Shown here one piece after another: positions 35,257-61,595 of a stretch of 64,000 nucleotides of DNA. A program made the translations under genes and the position numbers. The notes beneath the pieces are model-generated. The model did no database searches, had not been told where the DNA came from, and saw only the letters and a program-made list of their open reading frames with translations. Each line of letters begins with the position of its first letter. The stretch's first letter is position 1. The stretch is taken from IMG/VR virus record IMGVR_UViG_3300049793_000366, positions 372,001-436,000 of that record; one strand, given 5' to 3'.

Positions 35257-35361
35257 ATGTTAGTTATCAGTTCACATAAACATTTTAGTAAATCTAATAA
35301 GTGGTTTAGCCACTCTGGTTCGTGCTATGGCGTTTGTGTAAACTCTACTACAATGATGTAA
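35257..35361 (+). CDS. His/Lys/Phe/Trp/Ser leader peptide MLVISSHKHFSKSNKWFSHSGSCYGVCVNSTTMM
   Basis: Core HKHFSKSNKWFSHS ahead of a terminator and the His/Lys/Trp/Phe/Ser tRNA array. Confidence 0.8.
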   Translation: MLVISSHKHFSKSNKWFSHSGSCYGVCVNSTTMM

Positions 35362-35383
35362 AGAATTTAAATCACAATACTCG

Positions 35384-35416
35384 AAGCTCGAACCGTAAAA
35401 AGTTCGAGCTTTTTTT
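35384..35416 (+). terminator. Attenuator terminator
   Basis: aagctcgaac/gttcgagctt + T tract; leader tggttcgtgct pairs with agctcgaaccg. Confidence 0.82.
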
Positions 35417-35441: not shown

Positions 35442-35514
35442 GGTGATTATCGTCCAATGGTTAGGACATACGTTTGTGAAGCGTAGGATATGGGTTCGAG
35501 TCCCATTAGTCACA
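35442..35514 (+). tRNA. tRNA-His(GUG)
   Basis: G-1, GTGATTA/TAGTCAC, TACGT-TTGTGAA-GCGTA; A73 rather than C73. Confidence 0.85.
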
Positions 35515-35527
35515 CAAGAAATAAAAT

Positions 35528-35615
35528 GCATCTGTATCCGTAGTTGGCCGAACGGTCCTGACTCTTAATCAGATGAACGAAAGTTCCACCACAGGTTCGA
35601 ATCCTGTCAGATGCA
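35528..35615 (+). tRNA. tRNA-Lys(CUU) with a long variable arm (type II body)
   Basis: GCATCTG/CAGATGC, CTGA-CTCTTAA-TCAG, variable arm GAAC-GAAA-GTTC. Confidence 0.78.
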
Positions 35616-35619
35616 CAAA

Positions 35620-35690
35620 GGGGGTTTAGCTCAATGGGAGCAGACGTATTATTAATATACGTAAGGAGAAGTTCGAATCTTAAGCCTCCG
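35620..35690 (+). pseudogene. Degenerate tRNA-like element
   Basis: Acceptor GGGGGTT/AGCCTCC and D arm present; T stem only 3 bp; extended anticodon arm with loop TATTAAT. Confidence 0.45.
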
Positions 35691-35697
35691 CAATATT

Positions 35698-35771
35698 TGA
35701 GGGGTAGCTCAGTGGTAAGAGCGCCGGGACGGAAAACCCGGAGGTCGTTGGTTCGAATCTAACCCCCTCTA
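35698..35771 (+). tRNA. Initiator-like tRNA body with an 8-nt anticodon loop ACGGAAAA
   Basis: U1-U72 mismatch, GAGGGG/CCCCTC, CCGGG/CCCGG stem, AGGTC variable loop. Confidence 0.6.
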
Positions 35772-35779
35772 CAAAGAAT

Positions 35780-35851
35780 ACATCTGTGGTGTAACTGGCA
35801 ACATGACGGTCTCCAAAACCGTTGTTATAGGTTCGAATCCTATCAGATGTG
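35780..35851 (+). tRNA. tRNA-Trp(CCA)
   Basis: ACATCTG/CAGATGT, ACGGT-CTCCAAA-ACCGT. Confidence 0.92.
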
Positions 35852-35856
35852 CAAAT

Positions 35857-35929
<73 letters not shown>

Positions 35930-35934
35930 CAAAT

Positions 35935-36007
35935 GGTGATTGTAGCTCAGTGGTAGAGCGTTGGTTTGTGGAACCAAATGTCGCGGGTTCGATACCCGTC
36001 TTTCACC
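35935..36007 (+). tRNA. tRNA-His(GUG)
   Basis: G-1:C73, TTGGT-TTGTGGA-ACCAA; two U-U mismatches in the acceptor. Confidence 0.82.
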
Positions 36008-36014
36008 CAAATAT

Positions 36015-36087
36015 GGAGCCTAAGCTAACTAGGTAGAAGCGCAAGACTGAAAATCTTGAGGATCCGGTTCGATACCGGAAGGCTCCA
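36015..36087 (+). tRNA. tRNA-Phe(GAA)
   Basis: GGAGCCT/AGGCTCC, CAAGA-CTGAAAA-TCTTG. Confidence 0.9.
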
Positions 36088-36131
36088 CAATATTTCGAAT
36101 CTTTTTTAGATGTTTCGAACTTAATATATAA

Positions 36132-37098: not shown

Positions 37099-37121
37099 CT
37101 AAACTAAAAAAGAAAGTGCAA

Positions 37122-38324
37122 ATGGAAACAGTAAATTGTAGAATACTAAACAGAAGACTTCACGGAAAGTCTGCGTTCTTAGATGTGTTAGCGAATGGTC
37201 AACATTTACAAACATATCTTAACATAAATGAAGTTGAGAACTTCACTGAGTTGACAGAATTACCAATAGGTTCTTTCATTAGAATTAACGGGGAATACTT
37301 CACAACCAGAACTGGTCACTACACGTTGAGAATAGATAATGCTCATGTATTATTTATACCTAACAGAATACTACCAGTAGTTCAAGACGATGGTGAGAAT
37401 AGATTCAATGAAGTAACAAACGTTGAATCTATTAGAAGAAGAAGATACCTTCAAACGATATTGAATGCTGAGGAAAGGCAAACATTCGTTACAAGGTCAA
37501 GAGTTATAAATACAATAAGGAATTTCTTTATACAAAGAGATTACTTAGAAGTAGAAACTCCAATCTTACAACCAGTTTACGGTGGTGCTGAAGCTACACC
37601 ATTCGTAACAAGATTCGAATCACTTGATTCAGACTTCTATCTAAGGATAGCACCTGAATTATATTTGAGAAGAATGATAATTGGTGGGTATGATAGGGTG
37701 TTTGAGATTGGTAGAAACTTTAGAAATGAAGGACTATCTAACAGACATAACCCGGAGTTTACTTTCATTGAGGTGTATACCGCATTTGAAAATTATAACT
37801 TTAGTATGGATGTAGTAACTGAATTGTTTACAGAAATATTCAATCAGTTCGGTGAAGTTGAGTATCAGGGTAACAGAATTAATTTCTCTAACATAGAGAG
37901 AAGAAGTTACACTGAGTTAGTAGCTCAACACTGTAATGTTGATACCACAACATTAACAGATAATGAATTGGTAGCGTTGTTTGAAAATGAAGTTGAAGGT
38001 AATTTAATTAACCCAACTATTGTATATGATTACCCAGCTAGTGTAAGTCCTTTAGCGCAAGTTAGAGAAGATAACCCAAGCATAGCTGAACGTTTTGAAA
38101 TATATGTTGGTGGAATGGAAATTGGAAATGCATACTCTGAGTTGAACGATGTGAATAGACACATCGAGAACATTGGAACAGAAGATGCAGACTTCGTAGA
38201 GGCACTCGAATATGGAATGCCACCTACAACAGGAATAGGACTCGGTATAGATAGAATTGTAATGATTCTTACAAACCGAGCAATAAGAGACGTTATATTC
38301 TTCCCAGCGATGAGAAGAGCATAA
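37122..38324 (+). CDS. lysS: Lysyl-tRNA synthetase class II, shortened
   Basis: YGGAEATPF, YLRIAPELYL, FRNEG..RHNPEF, RFEIYVGGMEIGNAYSELND, YGMPPTTGIGLGIDR. Confidence 0.93.
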   Translation: METVNCRILNRRLHGKSAFLDVLANGQHLQTYLNINEVENFTELTELPIGSFIRINGEYFTTRTGHYTLRIDNAHVLFIPNRILPVVQDDGENRFNEVTNVESIRRRRYLQTILNAEERQTFVTRSRVINTIRNFFIQRDYLEVETPILQPVYGGAEATPFVTRFESLDSDFYLRIAPELYLRRMIIGGYDRVFEIGRNFRNEGLSNRHNPEFTFIEVYTAFENYNFSMDVVTELFTEIFNQFGEVEYQGNRINFSNIERRSYTELVAQHCNVDTTTLTDNELVALFENEVEGNLINPTIVYDYPASVSPLAQVREDNPSIAERFEIYVGGMEIGNAYSELNDVNRHIENIGTEDADFVEALEYGMPPTTGIGLGIDRIVMILTNRAIRDVIFFPAMRRA

Positions 38325-38642: not shown

Positions 38643-39383
38643 ATGGAATGTAATGTGTGTAGTAAATCTTTTAAAACCGAAAGTGGTTTTAAGAGCCATA
38701 CTAAGAAGTCATGTGATAAACATATAAATAAATGTAGAAATAAAAATTGCCCAAAGTGTGGTTTTAAGATAGCAAATAAAATAGAAAGTCACATAAACAT
38801 ATGTGATGGGTCTGGACCAAGAAGATTAAAAAAAAGAAGAGAAGGTGGGCATCAGTGGGCGAAGGGTAAAACATATGAAGAGCTTTTTGGAAAAGAGAAA
38901 GCACAAGAACGTATAGAAGAGCTTAAATTAAATTATAAAGAAAACCCAATCATTATAGATGATGATGTGGAACAAGAGAGAAGGAATAAGATAAGAATAA
39001 AGATAATTGAACGCTATGCTAATGGTTGGGAATCTACTGCTGGTCGATGTAAGAAGATTTCATATTTTAGTAATGTAGCAGGTAACATTAAAGTAGATGG
39101 TACTTGGGAATTATCAGTAGCAAAATACTTAGATAGCTTAGGTGTAAATTGGATTAGAAATAAAAAACGATTTAAATATTTCAACTCTATTAAAAATAGA
39201 ACATCAACTTATTGTCCTGATTTTTATGTAGAAGAATGGGGTTGTTTTATAGAAGTGAAGGGATATAAAACAGAACTCGATGATATAAAATGGGCAAACT
39301 TTAAAGACAAATTGGAAATTTGGGATAAAGATAAGTTAACGAGTTTAGGAATAGATATAAGATATAAAAAGAAAAGAGTATGA
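38643..39383 (+). mobile_element. Putative homing endonuclease, PD-(D/E)xK type with zinc-finger N-terminus
   Basis: YCPDFYV..WGCFIEVKGY; KGKTYEELFG repeat-like segment. Confidence 0.72.
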
Positions 39384-40102
39384 AAAAGTATTTAATAGGA
39401 ATTCAACCAACAGGAAAGATACATATTGGTAATTATCTTGGTTGCTTGAAGAAAGGGCTTGAGTTACAAGAGAAAGGTAACGATGTAACTTTTCTTATAG
39501 CTAACTATCATTCACTAACGACTGATAGCTATACTGATGAAACTGAGAAGGAATTGGTAAGACTTGGTTGTAAAAATGTGAAAAGACAAACACCTGAGTA
39601 CACTGAATTGTTTTTCAAACTATGTTGTAATATGAACTTAGGTACTCTTACTAAGATGCCTCAGTACAAAGACAAGAAAGAAACAGCTAAGTATGACATG
39701 GGTATATTACTATATCCAGTTCTTATGACGGCAGATATTATGATGAATGATCCTGACGTTGTAATTGTTGGTAAAGACCAAGTACCACATTTAGAATTGT
39801 GTAATGATATTTCTAAAAGAGTAGGTGGTAGAGAATATGCTTATGAGTTTGGTGATGTAGATAAGATTATGTCACTATCAGATCCAACTAAGAAGATGTC
39901 AAAATCTTTGGGTGATAATCATGTGATGTATGTATTCGATGATGATTACGAAAAGAAAATGAAGAAAGCCAATGCTAATGAAGATGGCTTAAATAATCTT
40001 AGAAAAATAGCTACGTGCCTTGATTTACCAGTAGATTCATACATAATGAACATTGATTTGAAAATGGCAATTGCTGATAAAATGAAAAAATTATTTAATT
40101 AA
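39380..40102 (+). CDS. trpS: Tryptophanyl-tRNA synthetase, 240 aa
   Basis: GIQPTGKIHIGNYLG, YPVLMTADI, VGKDQVPHLE, KMSKS. Confidence 0.92.
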   Translation: MKKYLIGIQPTGKIHIGNYLGCLKKGLELQEKGNDVTFLIANYHSLTTDSYTDETEKELVRLGCKNVKRQTPEYTELFFKLCCNMNLGTLTKMPQYKDKKETAKYDMGILLYPVLMTADIMMNDPDVVIVGKDQVPHLELCNDISKRVGGREYAYEFGDVDKIMSLSDPTKKMSKSLGDNHVMYVFDDDYEKKMKKANANEDGLNNLRKIATCLDLPVDSYIMNIDLKMAIADKMKKLFN

Positions 40103-40150: not shown

Positions 40151-40219
40151 ATGAAAACAACAATGACAATAACAATTTCTCGCTCGCGTTCATCGCGTTC
40201 ACTACCTCTGGTGGTCTGA
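40151..40219 (+). CDS. Ser/Arg leader peptide MKTTMTITISRSRSSRSLPLVV
   Basis: SRSRSSRS core; all Ser codons TCN, all Arg codons CGY. Confidence 0.85.
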   Translation: MKTTMTITISRSRSSRSLPLVV

Positions 40220-40246
40220 GATTGTATTGTCTAATAAATAATACTT

Positions 40247-40278
40247 AACCCTTGGACTTCACTGTTCAAGGGTTTTTT
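40247..40278 (+). terminator. Attenuator terminator
   Basis: aacccttgga/ttcaagggtt + T tract; leader-end ggtctgag pairs with cttggact. Confidence 0.8.
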
Positions 40279-40384: not shown

Positions 40385-40456
40385 GGTCGCATCGTCCAAC
40401 GGATAGGATAACATCTTGCGAAGGTGTTGATGAAGGTTCGAATCCTTCTGCGACTA
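40385..40456 (+). tRNA. tRNA-Arg(GCG)
   Basis: GGTCGCA/TGCGACT, ACATC-TTGCGAA-GGTGT. Confidence 0.85.
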
Positions 40457-42308: not shown

Positions 42309-42770
42309 ATGGATATAGTAACTGATAATCTTTTACTGGTTGATGATAGTGAATCAGACCAAGAGCTAATAAGAAGGGCTTTTGAAACGCTGGAAATTTC
42401 AAATGAACTTATCATAATAGGTAATGCTCCTGATGCGCTAAAATATCTAAGAAGAACAAGTGTTCAACCAATGTTAATAATATGTGACATGGATATGCCA
42501 GGTATGTCTGGTTTAGACTTAAAGAGAGAAATACACAATGACTTAGAATTAAGAAAGAAGTGTATACCATTTATATTTATAACTGGTGGTGAGTCAGAAG
42601 AAACTATTAATAATGCCTTCTTTGAGTACTGTGTTCAGGGATATTTTCCAAAGTGTAATAATTTCGAAGACACTGTTAAAATGTTAGAGCTTATTATAAA
42701 TTATTGGTCAGCCTGTAGATTCCCACATAATACTTTCAATTTGATTAAGAGGGGAAAACAACATAGGTAG
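42309..42770 (+). CDS. Stand-alone response regulator receiver
   Basis: LLVDDSE, IICDMDMPGMSG (phospho-Asp), FIT, conserved Lys in YFPK. Confidence 0.88.
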   Translation: MDIVTDNLLLVDDSESDQELIRRAFETLEISNELIIIGNAPDALKYLRRTSVQPMLIICDMDMPGMSGLDLKREIHNDLELRKKCIPFIFITGGESEETINNAFFEYCVQGYFPKCNNFEDTVKMLELIINYWSACRFPHNTFNLIKRGKQHR

Positions 42771-42787
42771 TTTTATATATAACCTAT

Positions 42788-43015
42788 ATGAAAACATTTA
42801 CAGATAAGCTAAACGAATCTATATCACTACCAGAGAAAAATGGTTGGTATTGGGTATTAATAAATGGGTATGAACAACCAACACCTTGTTGGTATTCACA
42901 TGATGAAGATGGTGGTTACTTTCTTCCTGGTGGAATGGGTGACTCAAGTAGTATGGGCTTATTTGTTGATGATATAGCTAAAGTTGGTCCAGAGATAATC
43001 GTACCTGAATTTTAA
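42788..43015 (+). CDS. Small hypothetical protein, MKTFTDKLNES N-terminus
   Basis: TATATA upstream. Confidence 0.55.
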   Translation: MKTFTDKLNESISLPEKNGWYWVLINGYEQPTPCWYSHDEDGGYFLPGGMGDSSSMGLFVDDIAKVGPEIIVPEF

Positions 43016-43019
43016 ACTA

Positions 43020-43051
43020 TTTGCAAATTAGAAATATAATCCGTATCATTG
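43020..43051 (+). promoter_or_regulatory. Bacteroidota-type promoter
   Basis: TTTG 43020-43023, TATCATTG 43044-43051. Confidence 0.6.
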
Positions 43052-43055
43052 CACT

Positions 43056-43124
43056 ATGAAAACATTAAACATCAATACTCATTTTCACTTTCACTTCGAA
43101 AACCTCGAACTGGGAGTCCATTGA
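43056..43124 (+). CDS. His/Phe leader peptide MKTLNINTHFHFHFENLELGVH
   Basis: HFHFHF directly before a terminator, hisS and pheS. Confidence 0.9.
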   Translation: MKTLNINTHFHFHFENLELGVH

Positions 43125-43151
43125 TATTGATATAACTATATAATCATTATG

Positions 43152-43179
43152 AAGCCCAGACGAGAATCTGGGCTTTTTT
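43152..43179 (+). terminator. Attenuator terminator of hisS-pheS
   Basis: aagcccaga/tctgggctt + T tract; leader ctcgaactggg pairs with cccagacgag. Confidence 0.85.
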
Positions 43180-43216
43180 ATTTGCAAAAATTTAAACAAA
43201 ATAAAACAAAGAAATC

Positions 43217-43852
43217 ATGGAAATTAAATTAGAATCAACTTACAAAGGAACAAGAATACTATTCGCTGAAACTGCGAAAACAAAAAGAACAATCATTAAC
43301 AAGATGATTGAAATACTTGAATCATATGGCTATCAAGAAATGATGATACCAATTATTCAAAAGCAAGATACTTTTAAATCTAAAGTAGGTGCTGAAAACC
43401 AAAAGATGATGTACACCTTCAAAGATATGGGTGACAGAGATTTGTGTTTAGCACCAGAGTATACCGCGGTTATTCAACAACTTGCTAAAGAAAAGTTTAA
43501 ATTCAACAAAGATGTTAAGCTATTTTATGTAGCTGAGTGTTTCAGAGGTGAGAACACACAAGCTGGTCGATTTAGACAGTTCACTCAATTTGGTGTTGAG
43601 GTGATAAACCCAAGAGAAGACTACTCTGATGAAATGTTAGAGATAGCAAAAAAGTTAATTGAAATATGTACTGATAACTATGAAGTGAATACTGACGCGA
43701 CCAGAGGCTTAGACTACTATAAAGGTGGTAAGGGCTTCGAGATTGGTTGCCCAGAGTTGGGATCCTCTAAGCAAGTATGTGGTGGTGGTTCTTATGAAGG
43801 TGGTATCGGATTCGCTATCGGTGTTGACCGAATACTAATACTTAAAAAATAA
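43217..43852 (+). CDS. hisS: Histidyl-tRNA synthetase, catalytic domain only (211 aa)
   Basis: LCLAPEYT, FRGENTQAGRFRQFTQFGVE, RGLDYY, GGGSY, GFAIGVDR, then stop. Confidence 0.88.
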   Translation: MEIKLESTYKGTRILFAETAKTKRTIINKMIEILESYGYQEMMIPIIQKQDTFKSKVGAENQKMMYTFKDMGDRDLCLAPEYTAVIQQLAKEKFKFNKDVKLFYVAECFRGENTQAGRFRQFTQFGVEVINPREDYSDEMLEIAKKLIEICTDNYEVNTDATRGLDYYKGGKGFEIGCPELGSSKQVCGGGSYEGGIGFAIGVDRILILKK

Positions 43853-43860
43853 AACAGTTT

Positions 43861-44961
43861 ATGAAATATTTAAATAAAGAAGAAATAGAAAAAACTCTTT
43901 CTCTTAAAGACTTAACAGAAGATACACATCACGCCATCGGTATGATGGTAAGTGAAATAAAAAATGCTTTAGAATCCAAATATGGATTAGAAGCTAATGA
44001 AATAAGAACATCACCTATTGTTGATGTTAAAGATAACTATGATAGATTGTATTATCCACAAGACACGATTACCAAATCAAGTAGGTATACTCGTTGGATT
44101 GATGATAATACAATTCTACGTACACAAATGACTGCTTGTATACCAAATGCTTTGAGTAAGTTAAATACAAATGATTCTCTCATGTTGTGTCCTGGTATGG
44201 TATATCGTCGTGATGTTGTAGATAAAACTCACGTTGGTGAACCGCATCAAATGGATGTATGGCGAGTAACAAAAGACAAAGTGTATAACAGGCAGGATCT
44301 ACTTGAATTGGTAGAAACTATTATAAATGTTGTATTACCTGGTGTTCAGTGGCGCTATAATGAAACTTCGCACTACTACACCAAAGATGGTATTGAAGTA
44401 GAAGTTTATGTAAATGATAACTGGTTAGAGATTCTTGAGTGTGGTTTAGCTCTACCTGAGCTTTTAAGCGACTCTGGGTTAAATCCTGATACTTGGTCAG
44501 GCTTAGCGTTAGGAATTGGCTTAGATAGAGCTGTAATGCTTAGAAAGGGTATAGCTGATATTCGGATATTAAGAAGTGATAATCCGAAAATATCTAAGCA
44601 AATGTCCACATTATTAAATTATATTTCCGTATCTTCACAACCACAAATAAAAAGAGACTTATCGATTGCGGTTGATAGTGATGTTAATAATGAAGATTTG
44701 GGTGATATTATACGAAATTTGATGGGTGATGAAGTAAAAATCATCGAACAAGTGGTTATTATATCTGAAACCAAATATGAAGATTTATTAGAACACGTAA
44801 GAGAAAGACTTGGTATGACTGACAATATGAAAAATATACTACTTAGAGTTATAATATGCCCTCTCGATAAAGCTATGACTAAGACTGAAGCTAATGAGAT
44901 TTATACTCATTTATATAGTAAATTACATCAGGGAAATATTGGGTACACAATTAATATATAG
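43861..44961 (+). CDS. pheS: Monomeric phenylalanyl-tRNA synthetase (alpha catalytic domain fused to anticodon-binding FDX-ACB domain)
   Basis: LRTQMT, YRRDVVDKTH...HQMD, WLEILECG, ALGIGLDRAVML..GIADIR; C-terminal RDLSIAV. Confidence 0.88.
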   Translation: MKYLNKEEIEKTLSLKDLTEDTHHAIGMMVSEIKNALESKYGLEANEIRTSPIVDVKDNYDRLYYPQDTITKSSRYTRWIDDNTILRTQMTACIPNALSKLNTNDSLMLCPGMVYRRDVVDKTHVGEPHQMDVWRVTKDKVYNRQDLLELVETIINVVLPGVQWRYNETSHYYTKDGIEVEVYVNDNWLEILECGLALPELLSDSGLNPDTWSGLALGIGLDRAVMLRKGIADIRILRSDNPKISKQMSTLLNYISVSSQPQIKRDLSIAVDSDVNNEDLGDIIRNLMGDEVKIIEQVVIISETKYEDLLEHVRERLGMTDNMKNILLRVIICPLDKAMTKTEANEIYTHLYSKLHQGNIGYTINI

Positions 44962-44964
44962 TAA

Positions 44965-45828
44965 ATGAAACATCTTAAGAAATTTGAAGCACATCAGAGA
45001 AAGTATGATACAATACAAGGTAAAGACATCGCTGAATGTTTTTATGAATTTATAGAAGATTTCGGTGGTTCAATAGACACAAGAAGGAGTGATCCTTTCG
45101 GTGATACTGGTTACTTCGATAACGCATCTATATATGGTGCTAAAAATTGTCAAATAGATATTAATAAAACATGGTTTGCTAACACCTACTGCTATCATTT
45201 TTCATATAGAAATTCTGGTAGTAGTTATAGAGGTGATTTACCTAATGGCTATTATAAAAATTTTGATGGTGTTAATGGTGAATATAAAACAGCTCTTGAG
45301 AAAGGTACAAAAAGAGCAATGTCACTACTTGATATCGATGCATCAAGAGTACATATCGGTTCATTCTCAGCACATGGTGGACAGTTAGATATAATGTTCT
45401 TCCCAAATGAAAGCAATCCATCATTCAAAGAATACAAAGATGTTGAATTATACGGATGTAATGCTATTGTTGAGTTAGATAAGCTGGGATATTATTTACA
45501 GTGTAATCTTATTAGACACAATAATATGTTCCAGGTTTATAATTTAAATCATCAGATACAATCTATGCCATGTATCATTGGTTATATTGATTGTTATTAT
45601 GCTTACTTCAATTCACTGTTTGCTTTTGATGATGAAGAGAAATTAGCAAGTAAGAAACCATTTGAGAAATGGATGATGAAATTATGGGAAGATGTTTGTA
45701 AGAAGGTTGGTATTACTAAGAATTTTCAAAGGATATTTAAACACTACAAAATAACAACGCCACAATTTATGCGTTATATAGCAGACCATCAAGATACATT
45801 TGATGCTAAACAATTTTCAGGCAAATAA
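44965..45828 (+). CDS. Hypothetical protein, MKHLKKFEA N-terminus
   Basis: AATATATA upstream. Confidence 0.6.
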   Translation: MKHLKKFEAHQRKYDTIQGKDIAECFYEFIEDFGGSIDTRRSDPFGDTGYFDNASIYGAKNCQIDINKTWFANTYCYHFSYRNSGSSYRGDLPNGYYKNFDGVNGEYKTALEKGTKRAMSLLDIDASRVHIGSFSAHGGQLDIMFFPNESNPSFKEYKDVELYGCNAIVELDKLGYYLQCNLIRHNNMFQVYNLNHQIQSMPCIIGYIDCYYAYFNSLFAFDDEEKLASKKPFEKWMMKLWEDVCKKVGITKNFQRIFKHYKITTPQFMRYIADHQDTFDAKQFSGK

Positions 45829-47436: not shown

Positions 47437-47532
47437 ATGAACACTTTAATCTACATAGGGTATATAGCGGAAGGCGGTTATGAAGCGGGGAGCTTCGTGA
47501 ATGGCTTGGTTTTACCTATGCGTAAAGTGTGA
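47437..47532 (+). CDS. Tyr/Ile/Gly/Ala/Glu leader peptide MNTLIYIGYIAEGGYEAGSFVNGLVLPMRKV
   Basis: Core YIGYIAEGGYEAG with two ATA codons. Confidence 0.85.
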   Translation: MNTLIYIGYIAEGGYEAGSFVNGLVLPMRKV

Positions 47533-47558
47533 TGATATAAACATACTTAACAAATTCG

Positions 47559-47590
47559 AAACCCAGTCATTCAAATGACTGGGTTTTTTT
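47559..47590 (+). terminator. Attenuator terminator
   Basis: aaacccagtcatt/aatgactgggttt + T tract; leader tgaatggcttggttt (47498-47512) pairs with aaacccagtcattca. Confidence 0.85.
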
Positions 47591-47600
47591 ATGCCTTAAT

Positions 47601-47673
47601 GGTCCTATCGGCAAGTTGGTTAAGCCGCCACCCTTTCAAGGTGGAGTCACGGGTTCAAGTCCCGTTGGGACTA
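47601..47673 (+). tRNA. tRNA-Glu(UUC)
   Basis: CCACC-CTTTCAA-GGTGG. Confidence 0.92.
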
Positions 47674-47688
47674 CAAAAGATAATAGAT

Positions 47689-47762
47689 GGTCCGTTCGTC
47701 TATGCGGTCTAGGACATCGCCCTTTCACGGCGAGAACACGGGTTCGAATCCCGTACGGATCA
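47689..47762 (+). tRNA. tRNA-Glu(UUC)
   Basis: TCGCC-CTTTCAC-GGCGA. Confidence 0.92.
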
Positions 47763-47830
47763 CGAAGCAATTAAGCGCGGGAGGTTGCGCCTCCGATGAT
47801 AGAGATATCAGGGTTTTCTACCGCGTATAT

Positions 47831-47902
47831 GTTCTTATCGACTAAGGGTTAGGTCACCATCCTCTCAAGATGGAGATACGGGTTCGAATCCCGTTGAGAA
47901 TA
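47831..47902 (+). tRNA. tRNA-Glu(CUC)
   Basis: CCATC-CTCTCAA-GATGG. Confidence 0.88.
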
Positions 47903-47907
47903 CAAAT

Positions 47908-47989
47908 GGGTCAGTCGTCTAGCGGCAATGGCTGGAGACTGTAAATCTCCTCTCTTCGGAGTTCGTAGGTTCGAGTCCTACCTGGCCCA
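47908..47989 (+). tRNA. tRNA-Tyr(GUA)
   Basis: GGAGA-CTGTAAA-TCTCC, variable arm. Confidence 0.92.
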
Positions 47990-48001
47990 CACGAATAAAA
48001 T

Positions 48002-48083
48002 GGATCGTTAGCAAAGCGGCAAAGTCGGGAGACTGTAAATCTCCTCCCTTCGGGGTTCGTAGGTTCGAGTCCTACACGGTCCA
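48002..48083 (+). tRNA. tRNA-Tyr(GUA)
   Basis: GGAGA-CTGTAAA-TCTCC, variable arm. Confidence 0.9.
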
Positions 48084-48088
48084 CAAAA

Positions 48089-48170
48089 GCGAGTATAGTA
48101 TAATGGATGCTATGCTGGATTATACCGCACTTCCAATGCGGTGATGAGAGTTCGATTCTCTCTACTCGCT
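48089..48170 (+). tRNA. tRNA-Gly(UCC) with a 12-nt D-loop insertion
   Basis: GCGAGTA/TACTCGC, U73, CCGCA-CTTCCAA-TGCGG; extra TGCTATGCTGGA. Confidence 0.75.
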
Positions 48171-48403
48171 CTAAAAAATAAAATTAAAATGAACAATTGA
48201 ATTAATTGAATAGGTTAGCTGATATACAAAGTGTTAATTGTATTCTCAGTAATGTATGCCTTACAAAACAAAAACATGAAATGTCGTATCTACGAAGATG
48301 ATTATGAAACATCGGTATATGACTTCAACAACAACATACGAAGAAGAAGTATGTTGACAAACATAACAAACTATTACTCAAACGTAGATGAGTAATAGTA
48401 GAT

Positions 48404-48476
48404 GCGAAAGTAGCTCAGTTGGTAGAGCGTAACCTTGCCAAGGTTAAGGTCGCGGGTTCGAGACCCGTCTTTCGCT
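48404..48476 (+). tRNA. tRNA-Gly(GCC)
   Basis: GCGAAAG/CTTTCGC, TAACC-TTGCCAA-GGTTA. Confidence 0.93.
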
Positions 48477-48572
48477 CAAATGCCGAGTTGAAAGGGAACG
48501 CACAGTCGGCGGACTGCCCCTCGGCTCCAACTTGATGGAAAACAATAAACCCGTCCAACCAGACGTAAAATC

Positions 48573-48645
48573 GCGAAAGTAGCTCAACTGGTAGAGCGAT
48601 AGCCTTCCAAGCTATAGGTTGCGGGTTCGAAACCCGTCTTTCGCT
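48573..48645 (+). tRNA. tRNA-Gly(UCC)
   Basis: GCGAAAG/CTTTCGC, ATAGC-CTTCCAA-GCTAT. Confidence 0.93.
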
Positions 48646-48766
48646 CACTGAAAGGTATAAAGGTTGCAAACTTTATATTGAGTAGTAGCGTTGCTGACCG
48701 CTTAATAAAGAATGGCAATTGTTTCAATAACGTTTATGAAATAATTGTTTAGTTCAGCGAACATTT

Positions 48767-48859
48767 GCGAAGATAACAGCACTGGCACGTTCAGCCAGCC
48801 CACGTAAAAATATGCTGTATTGGATAGTGGTGAGTATGGTTCGAATCCTACTCTTCGCA
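48767..48859 (+). ncRNA. tRNA-like RNA with intact acceptor and T arm but remodelled core
   Basis: GCGAAGA/TCTTCGC, T arm GTA[T]GG-TTCGAAT-CCTAC; ACAGC/GCTGT encloses CTGGC-ACGTTCA-GCCAG. Confidence 0.5.
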
Positions 48860-48870
48860 CAAAATAAAAT

Positions 48871-48943
48871 GCTGGTGTAGCTCAATGGTCAGAGCAGGAC
48901 GCTTATATCGTCAAGGTTGTGGGTTCGAGTCCCGCCATCAGTA
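48871..48943 (+). tRNA. tRNA-Ile(UAU)
   Basis: GCTGGTG/CATCAGT, GACG-CTTATAT-CGTC. Confidence 0.85.
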
Positions 48944-48964
48944 CAAAAAATAAAAAAGAATTAA

Positions 48965-49153
48965 ATGAGTTCTAATACATTAACATCACACCACGGTGAA
49001 AGTAATGCTTCACGAGCGGATAAAATGTCTGGTTGGATTTCTCGCTATAAAAAAGAAACTAAAGCAAGAGGTAAAATGAGCATAGCGAAGAAATTGGCGG
49101 CCAGAAAAAGAAGAATGTTTTTAAAGAATCCTAAATTTTGGGATAAGATATAA
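48965..49153 (+). CDS. Small basic hypothetical protein inside the tRNA array
   Basis: 62 aa, Lys/Arg-rich, A-rich translation initiation region. Confidence 0.5.
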   Translation: MSSNTLTSHHGESNASRADKMSGWISRYKKETKARGKMSIAKKLAARKRRMFLKNPKFWDKI

Positions 49154-49161
49154 AACGACAA

Positions 49162-49235
49162 GGGGAATTAGCTCAGTTGGCTAGAGCGTCTGTCTTGCAC
49201 ACAGAAGGCCATCGGTTCGAATCCGATATTCTCCA
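49162..49235 (+). tRNA. tRNA-Ala(UGC)
   Basis: G3-U70, TCTGT-CTTGCAC-ACAGA. Confidence 0.93.
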
Positions 49236-49239
49236 CAAT

Positions 49240-49313
49240 GGGCGATTGGTGAAACTGGCTATCACACCTGATTTGCACTCAGGAATTACGGACTCGGATT
49301 CCGTATCTGTCCA
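49240..49313 (+). tRNA. tRNA-Ala(UGC), degenerate
   Basis: CCTGA-TTTGCAC-TCAGG; bulged acceptor; atypical T loop CTCGGAT. Confidence 0.55.
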
Positions 49314-49367: not shown

Positions 49368-50144
49368 ATGGATTGCAAAAACATAGAATGTGAAAATAAA
49401 GTAATTGATAATAGAAAATACTGCTCATTAAAATGTAGGAATGTTTATGTCAATAAGTATTTAAGAAATTATAATAAACTAGCAACTACTTTAAAGGTAA
49501 AAGGTAATAAGAGAAAAGAAGAATATAATCATAATCCTAAAAAATGTAAAAACTGTGATTCTATTATTACTTTTGAAAAAAGAAGAAATGAATATTGTGG
49601 GCATTCATGTCATGCAACAAAGAGTAATAGTGAGAGAGAATTTAATTGGGGTGATAAAATAAGTAGTGGTATAAGAGAGTACTTAGTTAGCAATGGTAAA
49701 CCATATAAAGCTGAATATACATTAAGCTGTAAGTATTGTAGTAATGTTTTTATAAACAAGCGAAAGGAAATTAAATATTGCTCAATTGAATGTAGAAAAA
49801 GTAAAAGAAGAGAAAATATGAATGAGCTTCAAAAGTATAAACAAAATGCATCGTTTAAGTTTAATTTAAAAACCTACTCTGATGAATTTGATTTTACTTT
49901 GATAGAAAAATACGGATGGTACTCACCATCAAATAAATCTAATAATTTGGATGGCGTGAGTAGAGACCACATGATTTCAATTGTAGAAGGATTCGAAATG
50001 GGAGTTGATCCAAGTATAATTGCTCATCCAGCCAATTGTAGGCTTATGAGACACAGTGAGAATATCGGTAAAAATAAAACCTCATCTATTACATTAGATG
50101 AATTGCTTGAAAGAATTAAAATGTTTAACGAAAAATACAATTAA
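49368..50144 (+). mobile_element. Putative homing endonuclease with zinc-finger repeats and an HNH-like C-terminus
   Basis: Three C..C...(K/E)YC...C repeats; SRDHMISI..G...HPANC. Confidence 0.7.
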
Positions 50145-50145
50145 A

Positions 50146-50898
50146 ATGGAAAATAGTTTATATAGTATAAATAGTTTGGTATTCTGGACTGAAAAGGAAT
50201 TACGAATACGTAGATTTATAGAGCAAACTTTCTGTGAAGAAATTAAAACAATTCTTCTTAAAGAAAATCAAGCTTGGAAATTTACACAAATCGAAGCACC
50301 GTGTCTAATACCACACGAGTTAGTTAATCAGAATTATACAAAAGAAGATATCTTCTTTATTGAGAAGACATCAGCGGATGAACCACAGATGGTTTTGAAG
50401 CCAGAGACAACACCGAGTTCATATGTGTATGCTCAGTATCTTTTGAATAATCATATGGTACAACCACCATTTGTTATCTGGCAAACCTCAAAGTCATTCA
50501 GACGAGAGCAAGACCAAGTAATAAAGAATATGAGGTTGAAAGAGTTTTATCAACAAGAGTTTCAATGTATCTATACAAAAGAAACACTTAATGATTATCA
50601 AGAAAAAGTATTGGAACCAATAAGGAAAATGTTTCAAGACTTGATAGCTCTACCAACAAGAATAGTAGAAAGTGATAGACTTCCTTCATATAGTATGAGA
50701 ACTATGGACATAGAAGTTTATAATGAAGATAAATGGATGGAAGTTTGTTCAATATCAAAGAGAACAGATTTTCCTGACAAAGCAAAATTCACTGTTAAGA
50801 ATAACGTAGTAGAAAAAGAACTTATCGTACTTGAAATAGCAATCGGTGTTGATAGATGTCTTTACAACTATGTTAAGAGAACAGAATTAGAAAAATAA
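50146..50898 (+). CDS. glyS: Glycyl-tRNA synthetase, dimeric (eukaryote/archaeal) type, catalytic core only (start moved to 50146)
   Basis: LKPETT, WQTSKSFRRE...RLKEFYQQEFQ, WMEVCSIS.RTDF, EIAIGVDR, then stop. Confidence 0.8.
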   Translation: MENSLYSINSLVFWTEKELRIRRFIEQTFCEEIKTILLKENQAWKFTQIEAPCLIPHELVNQNYTKEDIFFIEKTSADEPQMVLKPETTPSSYVYAQYLLNNHMVQPPFVIWQTSKSFRREQDQVIKNMRLKEFYQQEFQCIYTKETLNDYQEKVLEPIRKMFQDLIALPTRIVESDRLPSYSMRTMDIEVYNEDKWMEVCSISKRTDFPDKAKFTVKNNVVEKELIVLEIAIGVDRCLYNYVKRTELEK

Positions 50899-60518: not shown

Positions 60519-61272
60519 TTGGGCAGTATAGTGTCCTACACAAATCTTCGGGTTTGTGTGAAAATAAAGCTGGTAACAGTCTATAAAGCAAACGTAGAGT
60601 TTGCGACTTCTTCACGGGAGTTTAACTATAAAATACTTAGTATGTCTTTGATGGACGAATGTTCAATGAGATATCATCATCCAACTATGGTGATTGCGTC
60701 AGAAATGATTACAAGAAAGGTAGGGTATTATGTGCGAAATGTCCAAACATTAGTGCGTGTGCTATCTGATTAAGTTATACAACGTATAGTTTATATTCGC
60801 AAGGGTATTTATTATACATGGGCGACTGAAGCAGACGTGAGCTGGAAACTCACAGAAGGGCGTTTAGTATTTTGTTCTCAAAAGGAACGAAGCTATACCA
60901 CACAGGCGTCCTTCATACAAATAGTTGTTATCTAACATGATTTTGAAATATCAAAAAAGCAAAATCTGTGTGGCGCTGGAGTCGAAAGGTCTCTAATTCC
61001 ATCCGTTGCGAAACGAAGATGGAGTCTAATATCCCGCAAGGATATGGATTTAGCTAAGAAAAATCTAGTGGGCGCAACCCTTAGTCAGTTCGCAAGACTG
61101 AATAGACAGAGTAGCAGTTGAGTAGACAAACTGGTCAAACAGTTCTAGCGATACGAGTGATTACCGTAAGGAATCGAGACTGACAGAATACTTATCGCAA
61201 GGTGAGTGGATAATGAGAGAACCAATAATGCTCAGAAAGATTTGTCGACCAAAGCTATAATCTCAAGCTTTT
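60519..61272 (+). ncRNA. Large ornate ncRNA, GOLLD-like (about 750 nt)
   Basis: Five CGCAA-loop hairpins, UUCG/GCGA/GAAA loops, long-range helices (GAAGGGCG/CGTCCTTC, CACACAG/CTGTGTG); tRNA-flanked phage context; family call is from memory. Confidence 0.6.
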
Positions 61273-61276
61273 TTAC

Positions 61277-61350
61277 GGCGTGTTCGTCTATCGGAAGGAC
61301 GCTACCCCATTTCAGGGTAGAAACGTATGGTTCGAATCCTGCACACGCTA
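61277..61350 (+). tRNA. Glu-like tRNA-like RNA, near copy of 59987-60060
   Basis: Identical from GGAAGGAC through the T arm; acceptor GGCGTGT/ACACGCT co-varies. Confidence 0.6.
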
Positions 61351-61563: not shown

Positions 61564-61595
61564 TTTGGTCATGTCCGGAATTATGATTATATTTG
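61564..61595 (+). promoter_or_regulatory. Bacteroidota-type promoter
   Basis: TTTG 61564-61567, TATATTTG 61588-61595. Confidence 0.72.

What the first reader, a model, noticed from the sequence alone, without database searches (positions are those of the whole stretch)
43056..44961. HFHFHF leader in front of the hisS-pheS pair
Alternating His/Phe codons precede exactly these two synthetase genes. ttcga/tcgaa lies in the 1:2 helix, and ctcgaactggg/cccagacgag is the antiterminator. This is the clearest two-input case and is independent support for the whole interpretation.
Basis: partly seen in the sequence, partly recalled or inferred. Interest (0 to 1): 0.8.

Follow-up and report, generated by a model that had tools for sequence, protein, structure and literature searches.

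The report
Phage His/Phe leader-peptide attenuator
A giant bacteriophage carries a 22-codon mini-gene with alternating histidine and phenylalanine codons, followed by a switchable stop signal, which most likely turns on the phage's own His- and Phe-charging enzymes only when the cell runs short of charged His or Phe tRNA.

Summary
A 22-codon ORF at 43056-43124 (MKTLNINTHFHFHFENLELGVH*) lies between a Bacteroidetes-type promoter and a strong intrinsic terminator. Directly downstream are a 211-aa HisRS-like core and a 366-aa single-chain PheS-like ligase.

The RNA has the classical 1:2 / 2:3 / 3:4 attenuator layout. The His/Phe codons sit in arm 1, and the stop codon places a terminating ribosome on arm 2.

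Relatives provide a natural experiment:
- Two other loci with the hisS-like + pheS-like pair keep HFHFHF.
- Homologous leaders in front of hisS-like alone read HHHF or HHHFLH.
- Five phage leaders in front of pheS-like alone are Phe-only.

The window holds at least seven more leader/terminator units whose codons mirror the tRNA arrays and synthetases behind them. The true leader-to-gene pairing scores best of 40,320 permutations.

"hisS" is a truncated HisRS-like core. "pheS" belongs to NCBIfam's "PheS-related mystery ligase SrmL", not canonical pheS.

The mechanism is a known kind (pheMST, hisL). A phage setting, a His+Phe code and membership in a tRNA/synthetase attenuator set appear unreported in the searched literature. 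Nothing has been tested experimentally.

The parts
43020..43051 (+). Putative Bacteroidetes-type promoter: -33 TTTG (43020-43023), 20-nt spacer, -7 box TATCATTG (43044-43051; one mismatch to TAnnTTTG). It ends 4 nt before the leader ATG, so the leader mRNA would be nearly leaderless.
   Evidence: Read directly. The exact pattern TTTG-N19-21-TAnnTTTG occurs 12 times in the window, all on the + strand, against 1.9 expected. The perfect version sits at the same place in L096 and L101. Promoter function is inferred.
43056..43124 (+). Leader ORF of 22 codons: MKTLNINTHFHFHFENLELGVH*
   Evidence: Conserved in L101 (1 residue differs) and L096 (5 residues differ, none in HFHFHF).
43080..43097 (+). 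Regulatory codons His-Phe-His-Phe-His-Phe (CAT TTT CAC TTT CAC TTC)
   Evidence: Between the window and L096 there is only one synonymous change here (CAC to CAT), while codons 15-18 carry four amino-acid changes.
43087..43099 (+). Region 1 (5' arm of the 1:2 hairpin); overlaps codons 11-15
   Evidence: MFE and centroid folds.
43104..43117 (+). Region 2. It pairs with region 1 (TCGAA, TGGGAGT) or, alternatively, with region 3 (CTCG, CTGGG).
43151..43164 (+). Region 3: the terminator 5' arm GAAGCCCAGA plus CGAG of the loop. CCCAG and CGAG pair with region 2 to form the antiterminator.
   Evidence: In L096 and L097 the CTCG/CGAG pairing is lost on both sides and replaced by ATCTGGG/CCCAGAT.
43167..43179 (+). 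Region 4 (terminator 3' arm TCTGGGCTTT) and the U-tract
   Evidence: a 10-bp stem with 5 G-C pairs, about -15.6 kcal/mol.
43217..43852 (+). Mini HisRS-like protein, 211 aa. It is a class II core that lacks the insertion and anticodon-binding domains.
   Evidence: Pfam PF13393 at 5e-21. TIGR00442 at 150 bits, below the cutoff of 287. PDB HisRS hits at 1e-26 align APEYT, FRGE..GRFRQFTQFGVE, RGLDYY, GGGSYE and GFAIGVDR to the HisRS motifs. More than 1,700 relatives, many named histidyl-tRNA synthetase by JGI.
43861..44961 (+). Single-chain PheS-like ligase, 366 aa (PheS catalytic core plus FDX-ACB domain, mitochondrial-PheRS-like architecture). It starts 8 nt after the hisS-like stop.
   Evidence: Pfam PF01409 at 2.6e-35 plus PF03147. 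NF051887 SrmL at 434 bits (cutoff 300); TIGR00469 pheS_mito at 158 bits (below 258). PDB PheRS alpha hits at 2e-23.
44965..45828 (+). orf287, unknown function. It starts 3 nt after the pheS-like stop and is probably the last gene of the same transcription unit.
   Evidence: coordinates. No Pfam, NCBIfam or PHROG hit. Co-transcription is inferred from spacing only.

Best explanation
This is a ribosome-mediated (leader-peptide) transcription attenuator in a huge phage of a Bacteroidetes-type host. It works as an OR gate for two amino acids.

Proposed sequence of events:
1. Host-type RNA polymerase starts at a -33/-7 promoter a few bases before the leader AUG (inferred).
2. A ribosome translates the 22-codon leader behind the polymerase.
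3. If His-tRNA(His) and Phe-tRNA(Phe) are plentiful, the ribosome runs to the UGA at 43122 and covers region 2. The terminator (regions 3:4, 43151-43176 plus the U-run) forms and transcription stops before the genes.
4. If either charged tRNA is scarce, the ribosome stalls on one of the six alternating CAY/UUY codons (43080-43097). That holds region 1 and leaves region 2 free.
5. Region 2 then pairs with region 3 (CUGGG/CCCAG plus UCG/CGA) before region 4 is made. The terminator cannot form, and the polymerase reads into the mini-HisRS, the PheS-like ligase and probably orf287.

Shown computationally: the ORF, the three alternative helices, the terminator, the gene identities, and the co-variation of leader codons with gene content across relatives.

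Inferred: the promoter, coupling of translation to transcription, the actual response to starvation, and the enzymatic activities.
For: Anatomy:
- The ORF and HFHFHF are present.
- The MFE fold is a 1:2 hairpin plus the terminator, z = -5.0.
- With the ribosome footprint placed on codons 9-14 and region 4 untranscribed, region 2 pairs with the terminator 5' arm at -11 to -14 kcal/mol. This beats 297 of 300 shuffles.
- With the ribosome at the stop codon, only the terminator forms.

Genes:
- Pfam, NCBIfam and PDB searches identify a HisRS-like core and a PheS-like ligase.
- The gaps are 8 nt and 3 nt, with no terminator between the genes.

Natural experiment:
- Pair loci L101 (HisRS-like 92% identical) and L096 (87%) keep HFHFHF. 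L096 has only a synonymous change in the regulatory codons, while the flanking codons change and pairing is preserved.
- In L097-L100 (85%), hisS-like is not followed by pheS-like. The homologous leader reads MTINLNIFNVHHHFDRIDLGVH*.
- L158 (81%) has hisS-like alone behind MISKFVNKHHHFLHR*.
- pheS-like alone is preceded by Phe-only leaders: FNFFF in LR745206, FTYFFF, FSFFMFDFF, FNFFSFF and FKFSFTSFFF. Each has its own terminator and antiterminator.

System context:
- Seven further leader/terminator units in the window mirror their downstream tRNA and aaRS genes.
- The true leader-to-gene assignment is the best of 40,320 permutations.
- These units show the same fold logic.
- The HKWF leader is conserved in LR745206 and LR756502, and the SR leader in L096.

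Host-type promoter: the pattern is enriched, 12 observed against 1.9 expected. The closest published relatives, of 634 kb and more, were predicted to infect Bacteroidetes (PMC7162821).
Against: - There are no expression, termination or ribosome data.
- On the full-length RNA the terminator remains the thermodynamic optimum even with region 1 masked. Antitermination therefore has to be kinetic, as in classical attenuators.
- A ribosome stalled on the last Phe codon would reach about 43108 and cover part of region 2, leaving only CUGGG/CCCAG.
- The -7 box has one mismatch in this phage.
- The three HFHFHF loci are close relatives and probably represent one evolutionary origin, so the His+Phe case has few independent replicates.
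- The hisS-only leaders still keep one or two Phe codons.
- Most (about 80% identical) relatives of the mini-HisRS have no leader at all and sit between RNA-ligase genes.
- Neither enzyme's specificity is proven. The mini-HisRS lacks an anticodon-binding domain and scores below the NCBIfam cutoff. The second enzyme belongs to a family NCBI calls a 'mystery ligase'.
Confidence: 0.75

Rival explanations
1. It is a single-input attenuator. Only the Phe codons (or only the His codons) matter, and the other residue is an incidental spacer like the non-Phe residues in other Phe leaders.
For: Phe leaders of relatives carry varied spacers: N, S, T, Y, M, D. The hisS-only leaders keep an F after HHH. 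The HF design is seen in only one closely related group.
Against: - All three spacers are His, whose background frequency is 1.8%.
- His is nearly absent from the five pheS-only leaders: four have none, and L002 has a single His just after its Phe run.
- His becomes a run of three when hisS-like is the only synthetase behind the leader: in the homologous L097 leader and in the similarly built L158 leader.
- The His codons show only a synonymous change between the window and L096.
Confidence: 0.1
2. There is no attenuation. The hairpin is simply the terminator of the upstream genes (SerRS, receiver-domain protein, 75-aa ORF), and the small ORF is a chance reading frame.
For: A terminator after 43015 would be expected anyway. 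AT-rich DNA yields many short ORFs. Alternating XYXYXY hexapeptides of some kind occur about 1.7 times per window by chance.
Against: - A promoter-like element lies between the upstream gene and the ORF.
- The ORF is conserved with a codon-level selection pattern.
- Its codon content tracks the downstream genes in relatives.
- Region 2 is complementary both to region 1 and to the terminator arm beyond shuffle expectation.
- The same design recurs at least 8 times in the window, with matching codon and gene identities.
Confidence: 0.05
3. The leader is translated and senses His/Phe, but control acts by another route. Examples are Rho-dependent termination, mRNA stability, translational coupling to hisS-like, or a nascent-peptide arrest, rather than the intrinsic-terminator switch.
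For: The antiterminator is modest (-11 to -14 kcal/mol) against the terminator (-15.6 kcal/mol). Phage or host factors are unknown. The conserved C-terminal tail LGVH* in four leaders could hint at a peptide-level role.
Against: - A canonical G+C-rich stem followed by a U6 tract sits exactly where the model needs it.
- The conserved tail coincides with RNA region 2, so RNA pairing explains its conservation.
- Non-homologous leaders (L158 and the Phe leaders) share the RNA logic but not the peptide tail.
Confidence: 0.07

Closest known systems
E. coli pheM-pheST attenuator (leader-peptide control of phenylalanyl-tRNA synthetase)
   Same: A short leader ORF rich in Phe codons, followed by an intrinsic terminator, controls a PheRS operon by ribosome stalling. 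PMC3831192 lists pheMST among attenuation-controlled operons for tRNA aminoacylation. The mechanistic details are from my own knowledge of the classical work.
   Different: - This one is in a phage.
- The enzyme is a single-chain PheS-like ligase with no pheT.
- The leader interleaves His codons, and a HisRS-like gene sits in the same operon.
- The promoter is Bacteroidetes-type and the mRNA nearly leaderless.
- No sequence homology to pheM was tested or is claimed. The resemblance is analogy, not membership.
hisL (his operon leader) and multi-amino-acid leaders such as thrL (Thr/Ile), ilvL (Ile/Val/Leu) and ivbL
   Same: Runs of regulatory codons lie in arm 1 of a 1:2/2:3/3:4 switch. Some natural leaders integrate more than one amino acid. 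hisL and ilvL are cited in PMC3831192. A Streptomyces ilvL with Val, Ile and Leu codons is in PMC8079986.
   Different: - Those leaders control biosynthetic operons, and their mixed codons reflect shared pathways.
- Here the mix (His and Phe, which are biosynthetically unrelated) reflects the two charging enzymes placed behind the leader.
- The strict alternation HFHFHF is unusual.
Leader-peptide attenuators before aaRS genes in Streptomyces lividans (alaL-alaS, thrL-thrS, trpL2-trpS, leuL2-leuS)
   Same: Short leader peptides, often from leaderless transcripts and enriched in the cognate amino acid, lie upstream of synthetase genes (PMC8079986).
   Different: Those are bacterial, with one amino acid and one gene each. 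There is no phage case, no two-enzyme two-amino-acid case, and no tRNA arrays.
T-box riboswitches
   Same: They have the same physiological logic: synthetase expression rises when the cognate tRNA is uncharged, through a terminator/antiterminator choice.
   Different: T-boxes bind tRNA directly and need no translation. No T-box or any other Rfam family was found at 43000-43220. This element has a translated ORF instead.

Membership tests
Ribosome-mediated (leader-peptide) transcription attenuator | Short ORF with a cluster of codons for the regulating amino acid(s) | tested here: met
   22 codons, HFHFHF at codons 9-14. 7 of 21 residues are H or F against a 6.5% background, P = 2.6e-4. The hexapeptide is expected 1.5e-3 times per window.
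Ribosome-mediated (leader-peptide) transcription attenuator | Intrinsic terminator between the leader ORF and the structural genes | tested here: met
   A 10-bp stem with 5 G-C pairs and a U6 tract at 43151-43179, 37 nt before the hisS-like ATG.
Ribosome-mediated (leader-peptide) transcription attenuator | Mutually exclusive 1:2, 2:3 (antiterminator) and 3:4 helices. The regulatory codons lie in or before arm 1, and the stop codon is placed so that a terminating ribosome occludes arm 2. | tested here: met
   Folds with and without ribosome-footprint constraints and a shuffle control at 3/300. This is prediction only. The full-length MFE keeps the terminator, so the switch must be kinetic.
Ribosome-mediated (leader-peptide) transcription attenuator | Regulated genes concern the same amino acid(s), and the link holds in relatives | tested here: met
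   HisRS-like plus PheS-like genes follow the leader. Pair loci read HFHFHF, hisS-only loci read HHHF or HHHFLH, and pheS-only loci have F-only leaders.
Ribosome-mediated (leader-peptide) transcription attenuator | Read-through increases when the cognate aminoacyl-tRNA is limiting | not testable with these tools
   Needs a reporter, in vitro transcription-translation, or Term-seq of infected cells.
T-box riboswitch | Match to the T-box covariance model (specifier loop, T-box sequence) | tested here: not met
   The Rfam gathering scan of the whole window found only tRNAs and GOLLD, and nothing at 43000-43220.
Histidine--tRNA ligase (NCBIfam TIGR00442 equivalog) | Full-length score above the curated cutoff; catalytic core plus anticodon-binding domain | tested here: not met
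   150 bits against a cutoff of 286.75. The 211-aa protein lacks the insertion and C-terminal anticodon-binding domains. The core motifs (motif 2, RGLDYY, GGGSYE, motif 3) do align to solved HisRS structures. It is HisRS-like, and its activity is untested.
PheS-related mystery ligase SrmL (NCBIfam NF051887) | Score above the curated cutoff over the full model | tested here: met
   434.3 bits against a cutoff of 300, model positions 2-349 of 349. The family name itself says the function is unknown.
Canonical bacterial PheRS alpha subunit (TIGR00468) / mitochondrial-type PheRS (TIGR00469) | Score above the curated cutoff; for the bacterial type, a partner pheT beta subunit | tested here: not met
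   119 bits (cutoff 237) and 158 bits (cutoff 258). No pheT-like gene is adjacent. The architecture (PheS core plus FDX-ACB) resembles mitochondrial PheRS.

The most novel reading that the evidence does not exclude
The HF leader is one element of a phage-encoded, codon-addressed regulon. At least eight leader-peptide attenuators in this 64-kb stretch each gate a tRNA array and/or synthetase operon, and each leader is written in the codons served by the genes behind it:
- Gln leader: 4 tRNA-Gln plus GlnRS.
- Ser/Arg leader: a tRNA Ser/Arg array plus SerRS.
- His/Lys/Trp/Phe leader: that tRNA array.
- Ile/Tyr/Gly/Ala/Glu leader: that tRNA array.
- Val leader: ValRS.
- His/Phe leader: the two ligases.

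On this reading a virus measures, codon by codon, which charged tRNAs the infected cell lacks, whether from starvation, host shut-off or tRNA-cleaving defences. It then switches on only the matching replacement parts. Leader-peptide attenuation of tRNA genes themselves appears not to have been described.
Probability: 0.6. Interest if true: 0.9.

Novelty: new variant of a known kind. Interest (0 to 1): 0.78.

Why it matters
Huge phages are known to carry many tRNAs and up to 15 synthetases (PMC7162821), but how and when these genes are used is an open question. A leader-peptide attenuator in front of them implies that they are not constitutive take-over tools. They would be on-demand spares, induced by a shortage of the specific charged tRNA.

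The His/Phe leader is the cleanest test case, because its two-letter code matches a two-gene operon and relatives with one gene have a one-letter code. This makes the idea directly testable with a simple reporter.

It also gives functional hints for two poorly understood protein families. The 211-aa mini-HisRS and the 'mystery ligase' SrmL family sit behind His and Phe sensors respectively. That argues they really act on tRNA(His) and tRNA(Phe) charging.

Finally, it extends classical attenuation to viruses, to a Bacteroidetes-type SD-less and nearly leaderless context, and, in the neighbouring units, to tRNA genes.

Tried and rejected
- An exact 15-mer from the conserved leader tail (CTGGGAGTCCATTGA) found 54 viral loci. 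All but the phage's own contig were chance matches with no leader context.
- IMG/VR held no close relative of the pair beyond the source contig.
- The one other pair in the metagenome scan (L015) is a 1.5-kb contig cut before the leader. Its pheS-like start is out of frame with the nearby ATG, so it could not be looked up by exact protein.
- Thermodynamic folding of the full leader with region 1 masked did not give the antiterminator. It appears only when region 4 is withheld. I therefore treat the switch as kinetic.
- The small ORF before hisS-like in LR745206 (MRALHTYKITIDLG) is not His-rich, so I do not count it as a His leader.
- Most relatives of the mini-HisRS have no leader.
- Rfam found nothing upstream of bacterial SrmL genes.
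- Pfam, NCBIfam and PHROGs gave nothing for orf287 or the 75-aa upstream ORF.
- Literature searches found no description of phage leader-peptide attenuators for tRNA or aaRS genes, and nothing on 'SrmL'.
- A formal covariation count on the four alignable leaders was not run, because the helices are nearly invariant among them. Structural support rests instead on independent recurrence and shuffle tests.
Full report
**1. What the window is**

The window is part of a huge phage.
- Its DNA is 72-78% identical over the two synthetase genes to the 634-kb and 642-kb uncultured phages LR745206 and LR756502.
- It is identical to IMG/VR contig 3300049793_000366, 508 kb.
- It carries about 40 tRNA genes and a GOLLD RNA.
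- It has a dense set of synthetase genes:
  - non-discriminating AspRS
  - ProRS
  - GlnRS
  - a ValRS of only 509 aa
  - LysRS
  - a 240-aa TrpRS-like protein
  - SerRS
  - a 266-aa GlyRS-like protein
  - TyrRS
  - the two genes of this finding
- The published relatives of 634 kb and more were predicted to infect Bacteroidetes. The paper describing them does not mention attenuators or leaders (PMC7162821).

**2. The observation**

The ORF 43056-43124 reads MKTLNINTHFHFHFENLELGVH*. Codons 9-14 (43080-43097) are CAT TTT CAC TTT CAC TTC.
- CTCGAACTGGG is at 43104-43114 and CCCAGACGAG at 43155-43164.
- A strong terminator-like site (GAAGCCCAGA / TCTGGGCTTT plus a U-run, 43151-43179) follows.
- hisS-like starts 37 nt later. 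pheS-like starts 8 nt after the hisS-like stop. A third ORF (orf287) starts 3 nt after the pheS-like stop.
- By composition, HFHFHF or FHFHFH is expected 1.5e-3 times in the six-frame translation. It is the only alternating His/Phe run in the window; the one other run made only of H and F is HFFFF in another frame.
- Alternating hexapeptides of any kind are not rare (1.7 expected, 5 seen). The significance therefore lies in which residues alternate and where the run sits.

**3. RNA anatomy**

The 151-nt leader folds at -37.5 kcal/mol, z = -5.0. The fold has two parts.
- A hairpin in which region 1 (43087-43099, overlapping codons 11-15) pairs with region 2 (43104-43117).
- The terminator hairpin (regions 3:4).

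Ribosome-footprint constraints give the following.
- With a footprint on any of codons 9-14 and the transcript ending inside the terminator loop, region 2 pairs with the terminator's 5' arm. The pairs are CUGGG 43110-14 with CCCAG 43155-59, and UCG 43105-07 with CGA 43161-63, at -11 to -14 kcal/mol.
- This is better than 297 of 300 dinucleotide shuffles of the intervening sequence.
- With the ribosome at the stop codon, only the terminator forms.
- With the whole RNA present, the terminator wins even when region 1 is masked. The choice must therefore be kinetic, as in classical attenuators (established knowledge of trp, his and phe attenuation).

**4. Promoter**

TTTG (43020) - N20 - TATCATTG (43044-43051) is a one-mismatch match to the Bacteroidetes -33/-7 consensus TTTG...TAnnTTTG (the consensus is from my own knowledge).
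- The exact pattern occurs 12 times in the window, all on the + strand, against 1.9 expected. Three of these sit upstream of other leaders.
- L096 and L101 have the perfect TATATTTG box at the same place.
- The box ends 4 nt before the AUG, so the leader is probably translated from a nearly leaderless mRNA (inference).
- Leaderless leader peptides are known in Streptomyces (PMC8079986).

**5. The genes**

- *43217-43852 (211 aa).* This is a HisRS-like class II core.
  - It matches Pfam tRNA-synt_His and solved HisRS structures at 1e-26. Motif 2, RGLDYY, GGGSYE and motif 3 all align.
  - It has no insertion domain and no anticodon-binding domain, and it scores below the NCBIfam hisS cutoff.
  - It belongs to a large family of more than 1,700 proteins from huge-phage contigs.
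- *43861-44961 (366 aa).* This is a PheS catalytic core plus an FDX-ACB domain.
  - It is a clear member of NCBIfam NF051887, 'PheS-related mystery ligase SrmL' (434 bits). It scores below the cutoffs for canonical or mitochondrial PheRS models.
  - No pheT is present.
- Both phage tRNA-His genes have an encoded G at position -1. This is the identity element read by the HisRS catalytic domain (my own knowledge), so a domain-less HisRS could still work.

**6. Comparative test of the two-input idea**

| Downstream gene(s) | Locus | Leader |
|---|---|---|
| hisS-like + pheS-like | window | MKTLNINTHFHFHFENLELGVH* |
| hisS-like + pheS-like | L101 (HisRS-like 92% identical) | MKTININTHFHFHFENLELGVH* |
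| hisS-like + pheS-like | L096 (87%) | MKTININTHFHFHFDRIDLGVH* |
| hisS-like alone | L097-L100 (85%) | MTINLNIFNVHHHFDRIDLGVH* |
| hisS-like alone | L158 (81%) | MISKFVNKHHHFLHR* |
| pheS-like alone | L002 (LR745206) | MNTNTTFNFFFSHKMV* |
| pheS-like alone | L016 | MNKYFTYFFFTSFR* |
| pheS-like alone | L004 | ..FSFFMFDFF.. |
| pheS-like alone | L018 | ..FNFFSFF.. |
| pheS-like alone | L075 | ..FKFSFTSFFF.. |

- Between the window and L096, the six regulatory codons differ by one synonymous change. Codons 15-18 changed four times while keeping the RNA pairing.
- The antiterminator is also rebuilt differently in L096: AUCUGGG/CCCAGAU replaces CUCG..CUGGG/CCCAG..CGAG.
- The L097 leader is plainly homologous to the window's. 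It has the same tail, the same terminator and the same region 2.
- The L158 leader has its own terminator.
- Each pheS-only leader has its own terminator and antiterminator. His is nearly absent from these leaders: four have none, and L002 has a single His just after its Phe run.
- Genes downstream in the single-gene operons have no synthetase domains.
- In LR745206 the two genes lie 270 kb apart.
- In short, leader codons follow gene content: H and F for the pair, H for hisS-like alone, F for pheS-like alone.
- Caveats:
  - The three HF loci are close relatives.
  - The His leaders retain one or two Phe codons.
  - Most relatives of the mini-HisRS have no leader at all and lie between two RNA-ligase genes.

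**7. The wider system**

I scanned for ATG ORFs of 8-40 codons ending less than 90 nt before a strong terminator. On the + strand it found the following units.

| Leader position | Key residues | Downstream genes |
|---|---|---|
| 21928 | QQVQQQQ | 4 tRNA-Gln + GlnRS |
| 24545 | VVVV | ValRS |
| 40151 | SRSRSSRS | tRNA Ser/Arg array + SerRS |
| 35257 | HKHFSKSNKWFSH | tRNA His, Lys, Trp, Phe array |
| 47437 | IYIGYIAEGGYEAG | tRNA Glu, Tyr, Gly, Ile, Ala array |
| 19613 | QVQPDPQV | tRNA Asp, Glu, Pro + ProRS (weaker match) |
| 16117 | ..DD.. | AspRS (weaker match) |

- Scoring each leader against each downstream set, the true assignment is the single best of 40,320 permutations. Six of the eight leaders score best on their own set.
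- All units show the same three-helix logic.
- The HKWF leader is conserved at the peptide level in LR745206 and LR756502, in front of equivalent tRNA arrays.
- The SR leader is conserved in L096.
- The HF unit is thus one member of a coherent set, and it is the one with the sharpest natural control.

**8. Mechanism proposed**

The element is an OR-gate attenuator. A shortage of either His-tRNA or Phe-tRNA stalls the ribosome in region 1. The 2:3 antiterminator then forms, and the mini-HisRS, the PheS-like ligase and probably orf287 are transcribed. When both charged tRNAs are plentiful, transcription terminates at about 43179.
- Shown computationally: the sequence features, the predicted structures, their statistical support, the gene families, and the comparative co-variation.
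- Inferred: promoter use, coupling of translation to transcription, the physiological response, and the enzyme specificities.

**9. Comparison with known systems**

- It works like the E. coli pheM-pheST attenuator and hisL (PMC3831192).
- It also works like the leader peptides before alaS, thrS, trpS and leuS in Streptomyces (PMC8079986).
- Mixed-codon leaders are known for biosynthetic operons (ilvL, thrL).
- It is not a T-box.
- It is new in four respects:
  - the viral setting;
  - the His+Phe code tied to a two-enzyme operon;
  - the unusual enzymes;
  - membership in a set that also gates tRNA arrays.
- Searches of 8.4 million papers and preprints found no description of such a system. 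This is absence from that library, not proof of novelty.

**10. Verdict**

- It is a new variant of a known kind.
- Interest is 0.78.
- Confidence is about 0.75 for the attenuator with two functional inputs, and higher (about 0.85) for 'it is a leader-peptide attenuator' alone.

Noticed in passing
window 35257-35413, then tRNAs 35443-36088; L163 680-850; L164 1289-1440: The leader MLVISSHKHFSKSNKWFSHSG... plus a terminator precedes a tRNA array of His, Lys, (odd tRNA), Trp, Phe, His, Phe. Its His/Lys/Trp/Phe codons mirror the array. The motif H-K-x-F-S-K-x-x-K-W-F-S is conserved in LR745206 and LR756502 before equivalent arrays. This would be leader-peptide attenuation of tRNA genes.
   Followed up: partly
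window 47437-47588, then tRNAs 47601-49312: The leader MNTLIYIGYIAEGGYEAGSF... plus a terminator precedes tRNA Glu x3, Tyr x2, Gly x3, Ile, Ala x2. The leader core is made of exactly these five amino acids. A GlyRS-like gene (50098) and TyrRS (52433) lie further downstream.
   Followed up: partly
window 40151-40275 (and L096 1479-1600); 21928-22055; 24545-24651; 19613-19747; 16117-16234: Further leader/terminator units are present. SRSRSSRS precedes a tRNA Ser/Arg array plus SerRS and is conserved in L096. QQVQQQQ precedes 4 tRNA-Gln plus GlnRS. VVVV precedes ValRS. QVQPDPQV precedes tRNA Asp/Glu/Pro plus ProRS (ambiguous). ..DD.. precedes the non-discriminating AspRS (weak).
   Followed up: partly
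L001, L156, L157, L159-L162 (relatives of window 43217-43852): In most relatives (about 80% identical), the 210-aa mini-HisRS has no leader and is sandwiched between two RNA-ligase (PF09414) genes. This suggests a link to tRNA repair. The window itself has a T4 Rnl1-like RNA ligase at 3103-4446.
   Followed up: no
L021, L024, L025, L034, L043, L056, L060, L064 and others (high-GC contigs with SrmL homologues): The roughly 43%-identical SrmL genes on high-GC contigs, presumably bacterial, are preceded by a conserved small frame (..ARRF[ST][RC]P[RP][TA]P[AS]G.W.A..) and a very G+C-rich terminator (ACGCCCCCCGG...CCGGGGGGCGTTTT). No Rfam family matches. This may be an undescribed leader or riboswitch for this 'mystery ligase'.
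   Followed up: partly
window 60855-61350: A GOLLD RNA (232 bits) is immediately followed by a tRNA-like gene (61277-61350) that Rfam finds but ARAGORN does not. A Bacteroidetes-type promoter follows at 61564.
   Followed up: no
window 24695-26224, 39380-40102, 50098-50898, 37116-38324: Several synthetases are strongly shortened: a ValRS of 509 aa, where the match skips the middle of the full-length ValRS models (the editing domain presumably missing); a TrpRS-like protein of 240 aa; a GlyRS-like protein of 266 aa; and a LysRS of 402 aa starting at about model position 55. Minimal catalytic cores seem to be a theme of this phage.
   Followed up: no
window 35698-35772; L096 1751-1843: ARAGORN calls tRNAs with four-base anticodons (ggaa in the window, ttaa in L096). 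Unusual anticodons also occur elsewhere: Gly-ACC at 48089, Arg-GCG at 40385 and Ile-TAT at 48871.
   Followed up: no
window 3066, 9101, 13449, 15849, 19525, 21730, 28389, 35170, 40103, 53916, 59302, 61564: TTTG-N19-21-TAnnTTTG (the Bacteroidetes sigma-A type promoter pattern) occurs 12 times, all on the + strand, against 1.9 expected. Most lie just upstream of genes or leaders. This supports a Bacteroidetes-type host RNA polymerase.
   Followed up: partly
window 42309-42770: A stand-alone response-regulator receiver-domain protein (153 aa) lies between SerRS and the His/Phe unit. Its partner and role are unknown.
   Followed up: no
window leaders at 43056, 19613, 40151, 24545, 47437; L002, L004: Many leaders begin alike (MKTLNIN, MKTLINI, MKTTMTI, MKHINSN, MNTLIYI, MNTNTT, MNMLNKN). 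This could reflect common descent by duplication, or a shared need for an A-rich, unstructured start for SD-less initiation.
   Followed up: no
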